The notes under the pieces were generated by a model. That model worked only from the letters and a program-made list of their open reading frames with translations. It did no database searches and was not told the origin of the DNA. A program made the position numbers and the translations under genes. This document shows positions 4,640 to 15,673 of a stretch of DNA of 16,069 bases, in pieces. Numbering within the stretch: the first letter of the stretch is position 1; every line of letters starts with the position of its first letter. Source of the DNA: Octopus sinensis (lineage: Eukaryota); NCBI RefSeq assembly GCF_006345805.1, contig NW_021825239.1:1-16069 (forward strand). The letters run 5' to 3'.

Positions 4640-4687
4640 TCCCCAAATAAAACAATATATATATAAAACCACATCTATAAACAATAT

Positions 4688-4919
4688 ATATTTCTTTACT
4701 GCCCAGAAGGGGCTATACACAGAGGGGACAAACAAGGACAGACAAACAGATTAAGTCGATTACATTGACCCCAGTGCGTAACTGGTACTTATTTAATCGA
4801 CCCCGAAAGGATGAAAGGCAAAGTCAACCTCGGCGGAATTTGAACTCAGAACGTAGCGACAGACGAAATACTGCTTAGCGTTTCACCCGGCGTGCTAGCG
4901 ATTCTGCCAGCTCGCCGCC
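4688..4919 (-). mobile_element. tRNA-derived SINE, full-length monomer, 'tail A' type, with 10-bp TSD
   Basis: Minus strand: A-box-like TGGCAGAATCG near the 5' end; B-box-like GAGTTCAAATTCC; central GCCTTTCATCCTTTCGGGGTCGATTAAATAAGTACC (recalls the Meta-type conserved SINE domain, from memory); tail ending GGCAGTAAAGAAATA. Perfect flanking direct repeat taaacaatat at 4678-4687 and 4920-4929. Confidence 0.9.
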
Positions 4920-4928
4920 TAAACAATA

Positions 4929-5338
4929 TCTTTATCAACATAGAGTAGTTGCTTGGCTAGGTGGCGTTGCTCAATTCATCGTTCGAAAACATATAGTCTT
5001 CAAAGTGACACACAACTATTGATCTAATAAATAGAAACATTATTATTTCTAAATCTATCAAAGACATATATTCAGTAACAGTTCTGTAAAGTAAAGGTTA
5101 TTTGCCAACATAATGTGGCTGTCCTGGAAGAGACGATTGTTACTGTTGTGTAGCCCCAAGGAACAACGTTTCCAGCTGGCTATACGACACAATATCTGTG
5201 TCCTTATATTTTGGAACAGGAAGTCTAGCGCTCCCATCCAGCACAAAACAACATCTATGGACGGGTTTCCTTGTTATTGCTCTTTATCAGCCCAGAATAG
5301 CTGCTTGGTTCAATGGTGAATTCAGCAACGCCACCTAG
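4929..5338. repeat. Paired direct repeat plus inverted repeat (~410-bp unit of unknown type)
   Basis: Direct repeat 4929-4956 vs 5281-5308 (23/28 identical). Inverted repeat ctaggtggcgttgctcaattca (4957-4978) vs tgaattcagcaacgccacctag (5317-5338), 21/22 complementary. Confidence 0.75.
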
Positions 5339-6097: not shown

Positions 6098-6581
6098 ATG
6101 CTATTTTAGGTATTTAAATTTTGAGGTAGACAAGATGAGATATGTTTCAAATATCGATTAATTAATTAGTTTACGGAAGTTGTATACAGTTCCCGGAAAT
6201 AGAATATCCAATTTTTCATGTAGATGGCGTAAAGGGGAGGGTTGCGAAGGGTGTGGTAGGAAAAGAAGGAGAAAGAAGGAAAAGCGATTAGAGAGAGGTG
6301 TCAGTGGTAAGGGTAACGGGTTGTGCAAGGAGAAACTGGAGTGACGAGACTTGTCGAAGAAGGTGTTATAGGGAAATCAGTGTTGATAGGATTAATAGGT
6401 CGAGAAAAGAAAAAGATAGAACTTAAATAGGGGAAAGCACGAGGTGGCGGAGGTGAAGAAAGGGGACAAGGATGATAAAAGAGATGGGGAAACGGTGACA
6501 GAGAAAACGATGGTGGGGTCAGGGTTTATGAAAGAGATTGGGTGACTGGCGCAGAGAAATATTACTAAGTACTGATAATAT

Positions 6582-6960
6582 CGGTTTCAAATTTTGACAC
6601 AAGGCCAGCAACATGAGTGGGAGAGGGCGGGATAAGGGGACTAGTCTACTACATCGCCTCCAGTGTTTAACCGGTACTTATTTTATCGACTCCGAAAGGA
6701 TGAAATACAAAGTCGACCTTGTCGGAATTTGAACTCAGAACATAAAACTACTACCCACAAGGGGCTAAACACAGTGAGGACAAACAAGGACAGAGAAACG
6801 GATCAAGTCGATTATATCGACTCCAGTGCGTAACTGGTACTTAATTTATTGACCCTGAAAGGTTGAATGGCAAAGGTTGAATTTTAACTCAGAACGGAAC
6901 GGCAGACGAAATACCGCTAAACATTTTACTCAGCGTTCTAACGTTTCTTCCAGCTCACCG
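6582..6960 (-). mobile_element. SINE heterodimer: full tail-A monomer (~6748-6960) fused to a 5'-truncated tail-B copy (~6582-6742)
   Basis: Minus strand: head, B box, central domain and tail A (ccttgtgggtagtag), then re-entry at gttctgagttcaaattcc, central domain and a different tail (...tgctggccttgtgtcaaaatttgaaaccgatatt). Flanked by taagtactgataatat (6566-6581) and taattactgataatat (6966-6981). Confidence 0.8.
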
Positions 6961-6981
6961 TCTTCTAATTACTGATAATAT

Positions 6982-7137
6982 AAATCTCAAAATTTGGCAG
7001 AAGGCCAGCAAGTTAGGTGGAAGGGTAAGTCTTCTGCATCGATCCCAGTGATCACTGGTACTCATTTTATCGATCCCGAAACGATGAAAGGTAAAGTCGA
7101 TTCAGCCAGGCGCGCTAACGATTCTGCCATCTCCTTG
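6982..7137 (-). mobile_element. Tail-B SINE copy with internal deletion removing the B box
   Basis: Plus strand: aaatctcaaaatttggcagaaggccagcaag (tail B), ggtactcattttatcgatcccgaaacgatgaaaggtaaagtcga (central domain), jumping straight to ccaggcgcgctaacgattctgcca (head). Right flank taagtacagataatat at 7141-7156. Confidence 0.75.
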
Positions 7138-7599: not shown

Positions 7600-8690
7600 G
7601 CCCGTAATATAGCCTGAACAGGATAATGGTGGAAGGAATGTCGATAATGTTTAATGTTTAATACATAAGCACTGATAATGTTGGGCAACGTAGTGATAAT
7701 GTTATTTGAAGGAAGGAATGATAATGTTGGGTGGGAGATGTGGAAATGACGTTGACTGAAGAAATAGTGATAATTTTAGGAGAAATAGTCTTAATGTTGA
7801 ATGAGGTGTTATTGATAATGTAGGGGGGAAGGATTAATGATAAAATGGGTTGAAGAAATTAGTAACAAGGTTGTGTTTTCGGCGAGTTGGCAGAAACGTT
7901 AGCACGCTGGCCGAAATGCTTATCGGTACTTCATCTGCCGCTACGTTCTGAGTTCAAATTCCGCAGAGGTCGACTTTGCCTTTCATCCTTTCGGGGTCGA
8001 TTAAATAAGTACCAGTTACGCACTGGGGTCCATGTAATCGACTTAATCCGTCTGTCTGTCCTTGTTTGCCCTCTCTGTGGGTAGTAAAGAAATAGGTATT
8101 TCGTCTGCCTCTACGTTCTGAGTTCAAATTCCGCCGAGGTCGACTTTGCCTTTGTCCTCTCTGTATTTTGTCCTCTCTGTATTTTGCCCCTTGTGAGTAG
8201 TAAAGAAATAGGTTGTGTTGAGAAATTGTAATAATGTTGGGTGACTGAAGTTTCGATAATGATCGATGGAGAAAAGGTTTATAATAGTGAAAGGAATATC
8301 GATGATGTTTTATTTTTAATACAATATGCACTGATAATGTTATTTCAAGGAAAGGACGATAATTTTGGGTGGAGGATGTGGAAAAAATTGTTTGATCGAA
8401 GAATTAGTAATAATGTTGAATGAGGTAGGAATGATAATGGTGGGTGAAATTGTTAGTGATAAAACGGGTGGAAACAATTAGTTCCGAGGTTGTGTTGAGA
8501 AATTGTAATAATGTTGTGGGTGACAAGAGTTTTGATATTATTCGGTGAACAAAGGGTTGATAATTTGTGCACGGAATACTGATAACGTTCGCTTTTCTTT
8601 TTTTTTTTTTATATATATACACAAAGGTGCCGGTAATGTTATGAGAAGGAAATGCTGATAATGCATATGAAAAATATATTATGACAGGAA
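7600..8690. repeat. Degenerate GATAATGTT-based minisatellite with ~280-bp higher-order duplication, interrupted by a SINE
   Basis: gataatgt/gataatgg recurs every ~20-30 bp. ggttgtgttgagaaattgtaataatgttg occurs at 8211 and 8489; taatgttgaatgaggt...gataatg at ~7792 and ~8410; gataaaa(t/c)gggt at ~7839 and ~8458. Confidence 0.75.
7878..8209 (+). mobile_element. Tail-A SINE homodimer (full unit plus internally deleted second unit) with 10-bp TSD
   Basis: Head ggcgagttggcagaaacgttagcacg, B box, central domain and tail; junction aaagaaata|ggtatttcgtctg at 8094/8095. Second unit has a deletion and a 17-bp duplication (tttgtcctctctgtatt x2). Flanking aggttgtgtt at 7868-7877 and 8210-8219. Confidence 0.9.
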
Positions 8691-9158: not shown

Positions 9159-9342
9159 AGTATTAATGGTGACAGTGGTGATGGTAGTAATGGTGCTGAT
9201 GAGTGTAGTGGTGGTGGTGGTGGTGGTGGTGCGTGTGATAGTGGTGGTGGTGGTGGTGGTGGGTGTGGTAGTGTTATTGATGATAATGACCGCGACGATG
9301 ATGAAAATGATGATGATGATGATAATGATGATGATGATGATT

Positions 9343-9375
<33 letters not shown>

Positions 9376-9405
9376 TTGATGATGATGATGATGATGTTGA
9401 TGATA

Positions 9406-9464
<59 letters not shown>

Positions 9465-9595
9465 AGTATATATGAAGGTAATGGTGATGGTGGTGATGGT
9501 GAGTGTAGTGGTGGTGATGGTTGTGAGTACGGTAGTGGTGGTGGTGGTAATAGTGATGATGACGACGACGACGACGACTACGATGATGATGATGG

Positions 9596-9629
<34 letters not shown>

Positions 9630-9775
9630 AGTATATATGAAGGTAATGGTGATGGTGGTGATGGTGAGTGTAGTGGTGGTGGTAGTAGTGATGATGACGA
9701 CGACGACGACGACAACGATGATGAAGATGACGATGATGATGATGCGATGATGACGATGAGGATGATGATGATGGA
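9117..9775. repeat. Complex (GAT)n/(GGT)n/(GAC)n trinucleotide repeat with internal duplications
   Basis: Read directly. gaaagtatatatgaaggtaatggtgatggtggtgatggtgagtgtagtggtggtg occurs at 9462 and 9627 (165-bp period), with a diverged copy at 9156. Confidence 0.95.
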
Positions 9776-11360: not shown

Positions 11361-11561
11361 ACCATGTTGTTGCTAGCTCCTTATCAACGCAGTAATTTTT
11401 TTTTTGCTTTTGCTTTTTTCAAATCTAAAATATCTACTGAAAGCCTTTCTATCTTAATGATGTTATGTCAGGACTTGAAGGACGATTGATTGTTATCTCT
11501 AGCCGGCTGAGTGAAGACATAGGGACTGTTTCATTTAAAGACTCGTTATGTATTTATTTCT

Positions 11562-12712
11562 TTTTTCACTATTGCCCACAAGTGGCTAAACACAGAGGGG
11601 ACAAACAAGGACAGACAAAGGAATTAAGTCGGTTACATCTACCCCAGTGCGTAACTGGTACATAATTTATCGACCCCGAAAGGATCAAAGGCAAAGTCGA
11701 CCTCGGCGGAATTTGACTCAGAATGTAGCGCAGACGAAATACCTATTTCTTTACTACCACCCACAAGGGGCTAAACACAGAGTGAACAAACAAGGACAGA
11801 CAAACGGATTAAGTCGGTTACAATCGACCCCATGCGTACTGGTACATAATTTATCGACCCCGAAAGGATGAAAGGCAAAGTCGACCTCGGCGGAATTTGA
11901 ACTCAGAACGTAAAGGCAGACGAAATACCTATTTCTTTACTACCCACAAGGGGATAAACATAGAGGGGACAAACAAGGACAGACACAGGGATTAAGTCGA
12001 TTACATCGACCCCAGTGCGTAACTGGTACTTAATTTATCGACCCCGAAAGGATGAAAGGCAAAGTCGACCTCGGCGGAATTTGAACTCAGAATGTAGCGG
12101 CAGACGAAATACCTATTTCTTTACTACCCACAAGGGGATAAACATAGAGGGGACAAACAAGGACAGACACAGGGATTAAGTCGATTACATCGACCCCAGT
12201 GCGTAACTGGTACTTAATTTATCGACCCCGAAAGGATGAAAGGCAAAGTCGACCTCGGCGGAATTTGAACTCAGAATGTAGCGGCAGACGAAATACCTAT
12301 TTCTTTACTACCCACAAGGGGCTAAACACAGAGTGGACAAACAAGGACAGACAAACGATTAATTCGAGTTTTACATCGACCCCAGTGCGAACTGGTACTT
12401 AATTTATCGACCCCGAAAGGATGAAAGGCAAAGTCGACCTCGGCGGAATTTGAACTCAGAATGTAGCGGCAGACGAAATACCTATTTCTTTACTACCCAC
12501 AAGGGGCTAAACACAGAGTGGACAAACAAGGACAGACAAACGGATTAAGTCGATTACATCGACCCCAGTGCGAAACTGGTACTTAATTTATCGACCCCGA
12601 AAGGATGAGAGGCAAAGTCGACCTCGGTGGAATTTGAACTCAGAACGTAAAGGCAGACGAAATATCGCTAAGCATATCACCCGGCGTGCTAACCTTTCTG
12701 CCAGCTCGCCGT
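11562..12712 (-). mobile_element. Six-unit head-to-tail tandem array of the tail-A SINE (~184-bp period), with a single tRNA-like 5' head at 12667-12712
   Basis: Junction cagacgaaatacc|tatttctttac at 11743/4, 11929/30, 12113/4, 12297/8 and 12482/3 (spacings 186, 184, 184, 185). Every unit has the B box and central domain; only the rightmost continues into the A-box head. Candidate degraded TSD ttatgtatttatttct (11546-11561) vs ttatgcctttatttct (12715-12730), 14/16. Confidence 0.92.
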
Positions 12713-13083
12713 CTTTATGCCTTTATTTCTGTTAATCTACCCATCAGTTCATCAGTTTATCCATTGGTCGAGATATTCATCTGTCCATTGGAAACACCGA
12801 AGCCAGCGACCATGAAATTACTGGCCGAAGGACATAAGAATGATGGAGACGTCCCCTACTTGAAAGTATAACCAGGGTCAGAAGCAGAAACCGCTGCATA
12901 AAGATGGTGCATTGTCCCTGCGCCACAACTTTCAGCAACGAACAATGCGAATACATAATGCAAAGCAACGTACGAGGGTGGTCAAAAAGTAATGCCATTT
13001 TGTTTAGGACGGGTATAATTACCAACACAGGAACATGTATCATACATCAAAATGAAGCTGGTCCTCTGTGGATCACATTCCTG

Positions 13084-13275
13084 CTTCTCAACCTAGTCAC
13101 CGTTTCTCTCAATAGCAATGTTCCGCTTTCGAAAGAGAGCATGTATCCCTGCCCCGTTAAATTCTGTTGACTGTTCTTTGAGCCACTTCTTCACTACAGT
13201 TTTCACTTCCTCGTCACTGGAATAATGTTTGCCTCTCAAAGCCTCTTTCGTAGGTCCTAAGAGATGATAGTCCAG
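13084..13275 (-). pseudogene. Mariner transposase C-terminal fragment (left arm)
   Basis: LDYHLLGPTKEALRGKHYSSDEEVKTVVKKWLKEQSTEFNGAGIHALFRKRNIAIERNGD*VEK. This is the sequence following the mariner YSPDLAPSDY motif through to the typical GDYVEK terminus; one in-frame stop. Confidence 0.9.
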
Positions 13276-13312
13276 TGAAGATGATAGTCCAGTGAAGATG
13301 ATAGTCCAGTAA
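13262..13312. repeat. 3 x 17-bp tandem repeat at the fold-back centre
   Basis: agatgatagtccagtga at 13262 and 13279, agatgatagtccagtaa at 13296. Confidence 0.95.
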
Positions 13313-13313
13313 A

Positions 13314-13445
13314 GAGGCAGTGAAAACTGTAGTGAAGAAGTGGCTCAAAGCACAGTCAGCAGCATTTTATGGGGCACGGATACATGCTCTCATTCGAAGG
13401 TAGAACATTACTATTGAGAGAAATGGTGACTATGTTGAGAAGTAG
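13314..13445 (+). pseudogene. Mariner transposase C-terminal fragment (right arm)
   Basis: EAVKTVVKKWLKAQSAAFYGARIHALIRR*NITIERNGDYVEK*. Confidence 0.9.
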
Positions 13446-14078
13446 GGATGTGATCCACAGAGGACCAGCTTCATTTTGATGTATGATACATGTTCCTGTG
13501 TTGGTAATTATACCCGTCCTAAACAAAATGGCATTACTTTTGGACTCACCCTCGTACATGTTCTCATTCGAAGGTGGAACATTGCTATTGAGAGAAACGG
13601 TGACTATGTTGAGAAGTAGGGATGTGATCCACAAAGGACCAGCTTCCTTTTGATGTATGATACATATTCCTCTGTTGATAATTATACCTGTCGTCAACAA
13701 AATGGCATTACTTTTGGACTCATCCTCTTACATGCTCTCATTCGAAGGTGGAACATTACTATTGAGAGAAACGGTGACTATGTTGAGAAGTAGGGATGTG
13801 ATCCACAGAGGACCAGCTTCATTTTGATGTATGATACATATTTCTCTGTTGATAATTATACCTGTCGTCAACAAAATGGCATTACTTTTGGACTCACCCT
13901 CGTACATGCTCTCATTCGAAGGTGGAACATTGCTATTGAGAGAAATGGTGACTATGTTGAGAAGTAGGATTGTGATCCACAGAGGACCAGCTTCATTTTG
14001 ATGTATGATACATGTTCTTGTGTTGGTAATTATACCTGTCGTCAACAAAATGGCATTACTTTTTGACTCACCCTCGTA
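13383..14078 (+). repeat. 4 x 174-bp tandem repeat of the mariner terminal segment, each unit ending in a TIR plus TA
   Basis: Units 13383-13556, 13557-13730, 13731-13904 and 13905-14078. Each starts catg(c/t)tctcattcgaagg and ends ggcattacttt(t/g)gactca(c/t)cctc(g/t)ta. Confidence 0.95.
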
Positions 14079-14399: not shown

Positions 14400-15120
14400 T
14401 GATATACATATATACTTACATACATACATACATACATATATACGCCCATACATACATACTACATACGTACGTACGCGAAAACATACATACATTCAAACAT
14501 GCATAAATACATACATTCATAAAAAGATACATACGCCCGTACGTGCATACATACATACATACGCATACATACATACATACATTCATTCATAAATACATAC
14601 TTTCATATAGACATACATCCATACATACATTCATACATACATACGCACATATGTACATACATTCAAACATAGATACATACATACATACATGCATACAGCT
14701 ATACATACATACATACATACATACATACGTACATACAAACATACAAACATACATACAAACATACATACAGGCATATACACATACTTTCATACATACATTT
14801 ATGTACATACATACACACATACATACATGCACAAACATACATGCATAAACCCGTACAAACATATATATAATACATACATATACCTATACATACATATATA
14901 TACATACATATACATATACATACATGCATACATACATACAATACACACATACATACATCCATACATCCATACATCCATACATCCATCCATTCATACATAC
15001 ATACATACATACATACGTACATATATACATACATACGTACATACATACATACATACATACATACATACATACATACATACATACATACGTACACACAAAA
15101 ACACATACATGCATGCAAAC
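14400..15120. repeat. Long degenerate (TACA)n microsatellite field
   Basis: Read directly; explains the HTYI/MYVC-type ORFs in the track. Confidence 0.95.
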
Positions 15121-15304: not shown

Positions 15305-15346
<42 letters not shown>

Positions 15347-15673
15347 TATGCATATACAGTTACATAAATTTATGTATACAGATATATATAATATATATAA
15401 AAATTTATATATATATATATACATACAGACATATATATATATGTATGAATATATGTTAAAACCTGTATATATATATTATATATATATATATATATAATAA
15501 ATATATATTTATACACACACTATATATATATATATATATATATATATGCATAACAGCTACATACATTTATGTATACAGATAATATATATATATCTAACAT
15601 ACACATATATATGTATGAATATATGTATACTATTTATATATATTATATTATATATATATAAATAATTATTTAT

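What the first reader, a model, noticed from the sequence alone, without database searches (positions are those of the whole stretch)
11562..12712. SINE multimer system: six-unit array whose junction pairs the SINE 3' end with its own internal re-entry point
Seen: one complete SINE head followed (minus strand) by five further ~184-bp units. Each re-enters at the same base, ~46 nt into the head between the A and B boxes: ...GGTAGTAAAGAAATA|GGTATTTCGTCTGCC.... The junction is an imperfect hairpin. The tail's last 6 nt (GAAATA) are the reverse complement of TATTTC at the re-entry point, and tail GG(C/T)AG pairs with CTGCC (perfectly, as GGCAG, in the monomer at 4688-4919). In a monomer RNA the 3' end would therefore be held next to the re-entry site by 6+5 bp of pairing. 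The identical junction occurs in an independent, oppositely oriented, TSD-bounded insertion at 8094/8095. Inference: multimers are generated systematically rather than by random unequal crossover, either by RNA circularisation with rolling-circle reverse transcription or by RT template jumping from the internal site to a 3' end (jumping to RNA 3' ends is established for R2-type RTs). SINE-derived tandem arrays are known in other animals, so novelty would lie in the structural mechanism.
Basis: partly seen in the sequence, partly recalled or inferred. Interest (0 to 1): 0.8.

Follow-up and report, generated by a model that had tools for sequence, protein, structure and literature searches.

The report
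Fixed-joint SINE tandem array in octopus
A short mobile element (SINE) of octopus genomes sits here as a six-unit head-to-tail array whose units always join at the same base. This is a known kind of SINE-derived tandem repeat, but the RNA of its repeat unit is predicted to pair its own two ends, which gives a testable idea of how such arrays start.

Summary
One full SINE plus five ~184-bp units lie on the minus strand (11555-12710). All five joints read GAAATA|GGTATTTCG. The same joint occurs in an independent dimer bounded by target-site duplications (TSDs), at 8094/8095. An Octopus vulgaris locus has the joint with one base changed.

The array itself grew by DNA-level unequal exchange. Units 3 and 4 are identical and unit 2 is a recombinant.

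It cannot form in a full monomer RNA, where forcing it costs +11.5 kcal/mol. The re-entry base is the first base of the 3' arm of a stable local head hairpin. Once nt 1-47 are removed, the unit RNA is predicted to pair its two ends.

My best reading, at moderate confidence, has three steps:
- the RNA breaks in the hairpin loop;
- reverse transcriptase runs off at nt 48 and jumps to a nearby 3' end, which makes the joint;
- arrays then expand in place.

A dimeric master gene remains a serious rival. No ribozyme is present, so this is not a retrozyme. Genome-wide tabulation could not be done.

The parts
11555..12710 (-). Whole SINE multimer: one complete element plus five head-less units
   Evidence: TRF period 184, 5.9 copies; BLAST of one unit against the window; unit alignment
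12483..12710 (-). Unit 1: complete SINE with head (A-box-like and B-box-like motifs), CORE-like centre and tail ...GTAGTAAAGAAATA
12653..12685 (-). Head hairpin of unit 1 (consensus nt 29-61). It has 14 bp, and 5 of the inner 12 pairs are G.U, so it is stable only as sense-strand RNA. The loop is UAGC, and the re-entry base G48 (12666) is the first base of the 3' arm.
   Evidence: Minimum-energy folds of several copies; -10.9 kcal/mol in isolation; 86% of cells paired in 9 distinct heads against 39-53% in slid controls, with no informative covariation
12298..12482 (-). Unit 2 (nt 48 to tail). It is a recombinant: the 5' half is identical to units 3 and 4, and the 3' half is close to unit 1.
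12114..12297 (-). Unit 3
   Evidence: Identical to unit 4 over 184 nt
11930..12113 (-). Unit 4
   Evidence: Identical to unit 3
11744..11929 (-). Unit 5. It shares CCTTTACG with unit 1 and two private variants with unit 6, and has a GGT duplication in the tail.
11555..11743 (-). Unit 6, the terminal unit, with a degenerate tail GGGCAATAGTGAAAAAAGAAATA
12712..12733 (-). Upstream copy of the TSD-like flank (AACAGAAATAAAGGCATAAAGA)
   Evidence: 18 of 22 bases match the downstream copy; 8 of 2000 shuffles reach that score
11543..11564 (-). Downstream copy of the TSD-like flank (AAAAGAAATAAATACATAACGA). It overlaps the last tail, so the target site resembled the SINE tail.
7880..8209 (+). Independent dimer. 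Unit D1 is 7880-8094. Unit D2 is 8095-8209 and carries an internal deletion and a 16-bp duplication. The joint at 8094/8095 is the same as in the array.
7868..7877 (+). 5' TSD of the dimer (AGGTTGTGTT)
8210..8219 (+). 3' TSD of the dimer (AGGTTGTGTT)
4688..4919 (-). Monomer of the same family. Its TSD ATATTGTTTA lies at 4920-4929 and 4678-4687.
6749..6962 (-). Monomer of the same family with its tail cut 8 nt short. It is the middle member of a three-SINE chain.

Best explanation
This is a SINE-derived tandem array of an octopus SINE family. The element has a pol III box-like head, a CORE-like centre, and a tail ending ...AAAGAAATA.

Step 1, making the joint (inferred). SINE RNA is broken in the loop of the head hairpin, at C47|G48. 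The 184-nt product starts at G48. Its first bases (UAUUUC..CUGCC) are now free of the hairpin's 5' arm, so they pair with its own 3' tail (GGUAG..GAAAUA). The partner LINE reverse transcriptase copies this RNA and runs off at G48, right beside a 3' end. It then jumps end-to-end onto that end, or onto the 3' end of another SINE RNA. A final jump onto a full-length RNA supplies the head. The result is inserted as one unit with a single TSD.

Step 2, propagation (inferred). Such dimers can also act as source genes. The array contains no T4 terminator.

Step 3, growth of this array (shown). The six-unit length and its two-unit sub-pattern arose in place, by unequal crossing-over or gene conversion between units.
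For: Array growth at the DNA level:
- Units 3 and 4 are identical (0 differences in 184 nt).
- The 5' halves of units 2, 3 and 4 are identical, while the 3' half of unit 2 matches unit 1.
- Variants are shared by units 1+5, by units 2-4+6 and by units 5+6.
- TRF scores a 369-bp period above the 184-bp period.
- TSD-like flanks surround the whole array.

A fixed joint at independent loci:
- The array and the TSD-bounded dimer carry the same joint.
- O. vulgaris locus L122 carries the joint as AAAGAAAT|CGGTATTTCG.

A hot spot at nt 47/48:
- L122 reads [nt 89 to tail][nt 47-106]AAAA[nt 1-48].
- Its flanks are orthologous to O. bimaculoides. The 5' joint has a GAG microhomology, and a head fragment ending at G48 lies at the priming side.
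- This is the layout expected of a chimeric insertion stitched from RNA pieces.

Structure:
- G48 is the first base of the 3' arm of the head hairpin, next to the loop.
- Five of the inner 12 pairs are G.U, so the hairpin exists in RNA and not in DNA.
- End-to-end pairing is predicted only for RNAs that start at nt 47-51. Expected end-to-end base pairs are 3.7-5.7 there, against 0.17 or fewer for starts at nt 40-46.
- The pairing has probabilities of 0.5-0.73 in the unit RNA. It holds in units 1-6 and in the 4688 monomer.
- The tail's best partner in the whole SINE is the window starting at nt 48.

Other points:
- A second head-to-tail chain of three SINEs lies in the same window at 6563-7133.
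- No T4 run occurs inside the array. The first is at 11430.
Against: - Only three multimer loci could be examined, and the other 194 kb of cephalopod DNA fetched held just one of them.
- No RNA data are available. Cleavage at C47|G48 is inferred from DNA joints alone.
- Both multimers in the window have complete heads and an identical joint. Inheritance from a dimeric source gene explains this equally well.
- The L122 arrangement can also be produced by three ordinary events: insertion of a dimer, a nested insertion, then a deletion.
- The C/A difference at its joint could be a point mutation.
- There is no covariation evidence, because the copies are few and decaying.
- A six-unit chain made purely by jumps is unlikely. 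The jump step therefore explains dimers, not this array's length.
Confidence: 0.42

Rival explanations
1. Dimeric or multimeric master gene. The joint arose once, by any accident, in a source SINE. That dimer was transcribed by pol III from the head promoter and retrotransposed as a unit, as with Alu-type dimeric SINEs. Copies then expanded in place by unequal crossing-over. Under this reading the complementarity at the joint is a coincidence.
For: - All six joints in the window are identical.
- Both multimers have complete heads and a single TSD around the whole structure.
- The array has no internal T4 terminator, so a multimer could be transcribed whole.
- DNA-level expansion is shown directly.
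- Dimeric SINEs that amplify as dimers are well known (Discussion of PMC10702118).
Against: - Second units (units 2-6, D2, L122) share no diagnostic substitution that monomers or first units lack.
- The L122 joint differs at exactly the joint base, and in the direction of the head's own nt 47.
- L122 also has a head fragment ending at G48.
- The joint falls on the tail's best pairing site out of about 200, and on the loop/arm boundary of the head hairpin. Those would be two coincidences.
Confidence: 0.3
2. The unit RNA (nt 48-231) is ligated into a 184-nt circle, and rolling-circle reverse transcription yields multimers. This would be a ribozyme-free analogue of animal non-LTR retrozymes.
For: - The unit RNA is predicted to hold its 5' and 3' ends within 2 nt of each other.
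- In multimer transcripts each joint forms a small hairpin with the joint in its loop (-8.9 kcal/mol).
- Tandem 170-400-nt elements that cycle through circular RNA are described in animals (bioRxiv 10.64898/2026.07.22.740005).
Against: - No hammerhead or other self-cleaving ribozyme, nor any other Rfam family, is found in the array at E<=10. Excision would therefore need a host nuclease.
- Ligation needs compatible end chemistry, and a pol III 3' end lacks it.
- A single circle predicts identical units at birth and a star-like pattern afterwards. The array instead shows nested and recombinant patterns.
- A complete head at the 5' end needs an extra switch to a linear RNA.
Confidence: 0.1
3. 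Serial tail-homing insertions. Each unit is a separate retrotransposition event that lands in the tail of the previous copy, because the target is primed by homology to the RNA 3' end. Each new copy is 5'-truncated at a favoured stop near nt 48.
For: - Targets resemble SINE tails: AGAAATAAA at the array target and GTACTTAAT at the three-SINE chain.
- SINEs of two families abut tail-to-head at 6563-7133.
- Units 5 and 6 differ from units 1-4 about as much as unrelated copies do.
Against: - It needs the same truncation point in 7 of 7 joints, with no extra tail or TSD material at any joint.
- A perfect 10-bp TSD encloses the whole dimer.
- The identical units 3 and 4 and the recombinant unit 2 cannot come from separate insertions.
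- Fragment starts seen elsewhere are at nt 69, 81, 89 and 100, not at 48.
Confidence: 0.08
4. Purely DNA-level origin at each locus. Replication slippage or unequal crossing-over at a short homology duplicated nt 48-231 independently wherever it is seen.
For: - At the dimer, the 3' flank begins AGGT, which matches the re-entry sequence (C)GGT.
- SINE-derived satellites in squamates are attributed to unequal homologous recombination (PMC10702118).
Against: - The array's 3' flank (AATACAT) has no such homology, yet its joint is identical.
- The head hairpin is rich in G.U pairs and would not form in DNA.
- Identical breakpoints at independent loci are not expected from random slippage.
Confidence: 0.05

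Closest known systems
TSD1-(SINE)n-TSD1 tandem SINE arrays of the blood clam Scapharca broughtonii (PMC11481361)
   Same: The first SINE has a complete head, the following units are all truncated at the same head position, the last unit has a complete tail, and one TSD surrounds the whole array. Arrays run to 4-15 units, and the host is a mollusc.
   Different: In the clam the internal units are also truncated in the tail. Here every unit keeps the full tail. That paper discusses unequal recombination between TSDs as a possible route to such SINE arrays, and reports no complementarity between unit ends and no hairpin at the break.
SINE-derived satellites (sSats) of squamate reptiles (PMC10702118)
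   Same: Tandem repeats made of part of a SINE, with a longer terminal unit that reaches the SINE terminus. Unit length is 150-180 bp, with di- or trimeric sub-patterns. The authors argue for a non-random origin from SINEs.
   Different: sSat loci can reach 1000 units and tend to be subtelomeric. TSD-bounded short arrays with a fixed joint shared by independent insertions are not the stated pattern, and origin is attributed to unequal homologous recombination.
Dimeric SINEs that amplify as dimers (Alu and others)
   Same: Head-to-tail units transcribed from the left promoter and inserted with one TSD.
   Different: In Alu-type dimers the two monomers are diverged and each derives from a whole small RNA. 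Here the right unit is the same SINE minus its first 47 nt, and the copy number varies (2 and 6).
Animal non-LTR retrozymes (bioRxiv 10.64898/2026.07.22.740005 and the work it cites)
   Same: Short non-coding units in tandem, non-autonomous, and proposed to cycle through unit-length RNA with joined ends and rolling-circle copying.
   Different: The defining type I hammerhead ribozyme in each unit is absent. This element has a pol III SINE head and a LINE-type tail, not a Penelope-like pLTR.
End-to-end template jumping by non-LTR reverse transcriptases (R2 and group II intron RTs; chimeric L1 retrocopies)
   Same: [quoted passage not shown] The L122 structure and the three-SINE chain look like such chimeras.
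   Different: An RNA break at nt 47/48 is therefore required, and it has not been shown. The octopus partner LINE is unidentified.

Membership tests
SINE (short interspersed element) | Short, non-coding, many dispersed copies bounded by target-site duplications | tested here: met
   There are five or more copies in the 16-kb window. TSDs are ATATTGTTTA at the monomer, AGGTTGTGTT at the dimer, and 18 of 22 matching bases around the array. Copies at 85-96% identity occur in O. vulgaris, O. sinensis and O. bimaculoides loci and in an ENA metagenome contig.
SINE (short interspersed element) | Head derived from a small RNA gene (tRNA) with an internal pol III promoter | tested here: inconclusive
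   A-box-like TGGCAGAAACG and B-box-like GAGTTCAAATTCC are visible, with about 19 nt more spacing than in a tRNA. ARAGORN finds no tRNA in the window, in 12 heads, or in 196 stem-shortened variants. Rfam finds none at E<=10. The loop sequence TGCTTAGC resembles a tRNA-Ala(AGC) anticodon arm, but I recalled that from memory, so it is a lead only.
CORE-SINE superfamily | Shared ~45-65-nt central CORE domain | tested here: inconclusive
   A 23-nt central motif occurs in at least 120 JGI metagenome contigs, where similarity is confined to about 45 nt. That is how a conserved central domain shared with another host's SINEs would behave. PMC4824008 lists octopus OR1 as a CORE-SINE. No reference CORE sequence was available for alignment.
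SINE-derived tandem repeat / sSat | Tandem units that are a fixed part of a SINE, with a longer terminal unit reaching the SINE terminus | tested here: met
SINE-derived tandem repeat / sSat | Expansion and homogenisation by DNA-level unequal exchange | tested here: met
   Neighbouring units 3 and 4 are identical, unit 2 is a recombinant, and there is a two-unit sub-period.
Non-LTR retrozyme | Type I hammerhead ribozyme in every tandem unit | tested here: not met
   No hammerhead or any other Rfam family is found in the whole window at E<=1 or in three array units at E<=10. No CUGANGA core is present on either strand on reading the unit.
Non-LTR retrozyme | Unit-length circular RNA in vivo | not testable with these tools
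   No RNA data are available.
Dimeric SINE family (amplifies as a dimer) | Left and right units carry consistent diagnostic differences across loci | tested here: inconclusive
   No shared diagnostic substitution was seen in the second units of three loci, but the sample is far too small.

The most novel reading that the evidence does not exclude
A SINE carries a built-in route to becoming a satellite. A host nuclease cuts the anticodon-like loop of the head hairpin at nt 47/48. This frees a 184-nt RNA whose two ends then pair. The LINE reverse transcriptase, or a ligase, joins end to end at that pairing. Fixed-joint multimers are thus produced repeatedly during retrotransposition. This would be a ribozyme-free counterpart of retrozymes, and a defined molecular origin for SINE-derived tandem repeats.
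Probability: 0.3. Interest if true: 0.7.

Novelty: new member of a known kind. Interest (0 to 1): 0.48.

Why it matters
How interspersed repeats turn into tandem repeats and satellites is an open question. Published SINE-derived arrays in clams and squamates are explained only by general unequal recombination.

This family gives a concrete, falsifiable alternative for the first step. The joint sits at the loop of an RNA-only hairpin. The repeat unit's RNA ends are complementary only once the first 47 nt are gone. One locus also looks stitched together from RNA pieces that end at that position.

If the idea is confirmed genome-wide and at the RNA level, SINE multimerisation would be a product of RNA processing plus reverse-transcriptase template jumping. 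If it is refuted, this is an ordinary dimeric SINE subfamily with local array expansion.

Tried and rejected
1. Collecting genomic copies through ORFs. A SINE-antisense ORF that spans the joint found one protein in 5.8 billion, which gave one extra monomer (L001).
2. Collection scans. The B-box motif found nothing in the metagenome and genome contig collections. The central motif found nothing in the genome and viral contigs, but hit at least 120 metagenome contigs that share only ~45 nt. These are another host's SINEs, none of them in tandem, so they are useless for the joint.
3. Octopus DNA through proteins.
   - Rhodopsin gave the O. vulgaris, O. bimaculoides and O. sinensis loci.
   - An O. 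vulgaris protocadherin fragment, taken from the supplement of PMC6339937, gave five more loci.
   - The total was 194 kb, with only one further joint. The protocadherin loci contain no copy of this SINE.
4. Extending the window. Ten window ORFs are not in the protein collection.
5. tRNA origin. ARAGORN was run on heads and on 196 stem-shortened variants, and Rfam on the head. Nothing was found.
6. Retrozyme idea. No ribozyme is present.
7. Special conservation of the joint. The joint window has 2 variable columns, and 28 of 160 windows are as conserved or more so. There is no signal.
8. Covariation in the head hairpin. It is uninformative: 1 double change, no better than shuffles.
9. Homology-driven switch at the GAAAT shared by the tail and the hairpin's 5' arm. 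I rejected this because it predicts a joint that keeps the loop GCTTAGC, and that is not seen.
10. The Rfam 'miRNA' hits all lie on microsatellites and fall below gathering scores. They are chance matches.
Full report
WHAT IS THERE

The window is repeat-rich animal DNA. The SINE in question recurs at 85-96% identity in loci of Octopus vulgaris, O. sinensis and O. bimaculoides, so the window is octopus DNA by inference.

Tandem Repeats Finder reports a 184-bp period with 5.9 copies at 11575-12664. A 369-bp period over the same stretch scores slightly higher.

Read on the minus strand, a complete SINE starts at 12710 (GGCGAGCTGGCAGAA...). It has A-box-like and B-box-like motifs, a central stretch GACTTTGCCTTTCATCCTTTCGGGGTCGATAAATTAAGTACC, and a tail ...GGGTAGTAAAGAAATA. 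Five further units of 184-189 nt follow, down to 11555.

Every unit re-enters at the same base. All five joints read GAAATA|GGTATTTCG. The re-entry base is G48 of my consensus.

A BLAST of one unit against the window finds other copies:
- a monomer at 4688-4919, with TSD ATATTGTTTA;
- a monomer at 6749-6962, embedded in a chain with a sister family that has a different tail;
- a plus-strand dimer at 7880-8209, with the identical joint at 8094/8095 and a perfect 10-bp TSD (AGGTTGTGTT).

The array as a whole is flanked by AACAGAAATAAAGGCATAAAGA and AAAAGAAATAAATACATAACGA. These match at 18 of 22 bases, and 8 of 2000 shuffles score as well.

HOW THE ARRAY GREW

Units 3 and 4 are identical over 184 nt.

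The 5' halves of units 2, 3 and 4 are identical. The 3' half of unit 2 differs from unit 3 at about seven substitutions and matches unit 1 except for one.

Units 1 and 5 share CCTTTACG. Units 2-4 and 6 share ACATTC. Units 5 and 6 share two private variants.

This nested, recombinant pattern, together with the two-unit sub-period, is what unequal crossing-over or gene conversion produces. It is not what a single run of reverse transcription on one template produces: that run would give identical units which then diverge independently.

The flank divergence (4 of 22) allows for an old insertion, so the roughly 11% divergence of units 5 and 6 needs no separate origin. I consider DNA-level expansion of this array shown. 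Only the origin of the first joint remains to be explained.

The complementarity is real. The 16-nt tail's best duplex partner anywhere in the SINE is the window starting at nt 48. It ranks first of about 200 at -11.1 kcal/mol. Shuffled tails reach that value in 59 of 5000 trials.

In full-length folds of four copies and the consensus, the pair probabilities are 0.05 or lower, and mostly 0.001 or lower. Forcing the 11 pairs raises the ensemble free energy by 11.5 kcal/mol.

The reason is that UAUUUCGUCU is the 3' arm of a local head hairpin, GC.GGGUGAAAUGCU-UAGC-GGUAUUUCGUCU.GC, at consensus nt 29-61. This hairpin scores -10.9 kcal/mol in isolation. Across 9 distinct heads, 86% of its cells are paired, against 39-53% in slid controls. 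Covariation is uninformative.

Five of the inner 12 pairs are G.U. The hairpin is therefore a feature of the sense RNA, not of the DNA. G48, the re-entry base, is the first base of the 3' arm, next to the loop.

THE TWIST

Remove nt 1-47 and the picture reverses. In the 184-nt unit RNA (nt 48-231), the tail/5'-end helix is the minimum-energy structure, with pair probabilities of 0.5-0.73.

I scanned every possible 5' end from nt 1 to 149. The expected number of base pairs between the first 10 and last 9 nt is 0.17 or fewer for starts at nt 40-46. It jumps to 3.7-5.7 for starts at nt 47-51.

The pairing holds in units 1-6 and in the 4688 monomer (3.3-5.0 pairs). It is weak in L001 (1.7) and lost in the mutated D1 (0.3).

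The repeat unit is thus exactly the piece of the SINE whose RNA ends can hold each other.

A THIRD LOCUS

I could not scan an octopus genome. By way of proteins I fetched 194 kb of cephalopod DNA: rhodopsin loci of three species and six protocadherin loci.

The protocadherin loci hold no copy of this family. The O. vulgaris rhodopsin flank (L122) holds one complex. On its minus strand it reads:

[nt 89 to tail ...AAAGAAAT] | [CGGTATTTCG... nt 47-106] | AAAA | [nt 1-48 ...GCTTAGCG] | flank

The tail-to-head joint is the same as in the window, except that the base at the joint is C, the head's own nt 47, instead of A.

The flanks align to O. bimaculoides, which has 795 bp of other sequence between them. 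The upstream joint shows a GAG microhomology, as 5' joints of target-primed insertions often do. The downstream, priming-side piece is a head fragment that ends at G48.

The simplest single-event reading is a chimeric insertion copied from three RNA pieces, two of which have an end at nt 47/48. A three-event history is also possible: a dimer inserts, another SINE inserts into it, and a deletion follows. That history requires a deletion end to fall at nt 48 by chance.

The window adds a hint of the same kind. At 6563-7133, three SINEs of two families abut head-to-tail.

MECHANISM

[quoted passage not shown] It is not a jump from an internal site.

I therefore favour this sequence of events:
- a break in the hairpin loop at C47|G48;
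- a unit RNA with paired ends;
- run-off at G48 beside a 3' end;
- an end-to-end jump.

This makes dimers that insert with one TSD. Such dimers may also serve as source genes, because the array has no T4 run and the first one lies at 11430. Arrays then expand in place.

The steps that are shown are the fixed joint, the TSD bounds and the DNA-level expansion. The hairpin and the end pairing are predicted, not shown. The steps that are inferred are the cleavage, the jump and its recurrence. My confidence is about 0.4.

The main rival, at about 0.3, is a single ancestral dimer that spread as a dimeric SINE, with the complementarity a coincidence. The circular-RNA version is possible, at about 0.1, but nothing here requires it. 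Serial tail-homing insertions and purely DNA-level origins fit poorly.

COMPARISON WITH WHAT IS KNOWN

[quoted passage not shown] It also matches the SINE-derived satellites of squamates, which have a longer terminal unit (PMC10702118). The kind is therefore known, and this is a cephalopod member.

It is not a retrozyme. No hammerhead or any other Rfam family is found in the array at E<=10.

It is not demonstrably tRNA-derived. ARAGORN and Rfam find nothing.

Its centre behaves like a conserved SINE domain: at least 120 metagenome contigs share only those ~45 nt. The literature places octopus OR1 among the CORE-SINEs (PMC4824008). I could not align a reference to test that membership.

VERDICT

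- The array is an ordinary SINE-derived tandem repeat that expanded by unequal exchange.
- What is worth following up is the origin of its fixed joint. Three independent features point to nt 47/48: the hairpin loop, the switch-on of end pairing, and the L122 pieces.
- The decisive test is a genome-wide tabulation of joints and fragment ends, plus 5'-end and circular-RNA assays. I could not run these.

Noticed in passing
window 6563-7133 (minus strand): Three SINEs of two sister families lie head to tail. They share the head and centre and differ in the tail. The sister-family copy at 6963-7133 (with an internal deletion) ends exactly where the 6749-6962 element begins. That element's tail is cut 8 nt short and runs straight into a second sister-family copy (6563-6746) that starts at about nt 61. 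The outer flanks (GTACTTAAT and GTACTTAGTAAT) resemble the sister family's own tail.
   Followed up: partly
window 12981-14078: A foldback-like structure lies directly upstream of the SINE array. Its 244-nt inverted arms (12981-13224 and 13302-13545) are 92% complementary. The right arm continues as a 174-bp x 4 tandem array (13381-14078), and a 17-bp x 3.2 repeat sits at 13262-13315.
   Followed up: partly
window 8095-8209: The second unit of the dimer has lost about 85 nt of its centre. It carries a 16-bp x 2.2 duplication (8151-8186) that creates two TTTT runs, which would stop pol III.
   Followed up: no
window 9297-9773, 14404-15114, 15308-15664 and others: There are very long microsatellites: (GAT)~156, (ATAC)~176 and (AT)~181. 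All 98 Rfam matches at E<=1 (mir-297, mir-3149 and similar) fall below their gathering scores; those I checked lie on such simple repeats, so I take them as chance matches.
   Followed up: yes
L122 24000-24259 (O. vulgaris OX597836.1); L123 19957-20755 (O. bimaculoides): The permuted SINE complex [nt 89 to tail][nt 47-106]AAAA[nt 1-48] in O. vulgaris sits between flanks that enclose 795 bp of unrelated sequence in O. bimaculoides. The O. sinensis orthologue lies just past the end of L124.
   Followed up: partly
L002-L121 (JGI metagenome contigs): The 23-nt central motif CCTTTCATCCTTTCGGGGTCGAT occurs in at least 120 metagenome contigs, where similarity to this SINE is limited to about 45 nt. 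These are presumably SINEs of another animal host that share a conserved central domain. None is in tandem.
   Followed up: partly
L001 179-396 (ENA ERZ23499442 contig): A monomer of the family (85% identity) sits on a 543-bp 'metagenome' contig. Its head hairpin loop is 4 nt shorter (GAAATAGTGGTGTTTCG), and two one-sided stem changes turn G.U pairs into G-C.
   Followed up: partly
L128, L129 (ENA ERZ21867824, contigs of 312 and 149 kb): A deposited metagenome assembly contains long contigs with octopus-type protocadherin gene clusters, which means it holds host cephalopod DNA. The contigs are annotated with prokaryote-style small ORFs.
   Followed up: no
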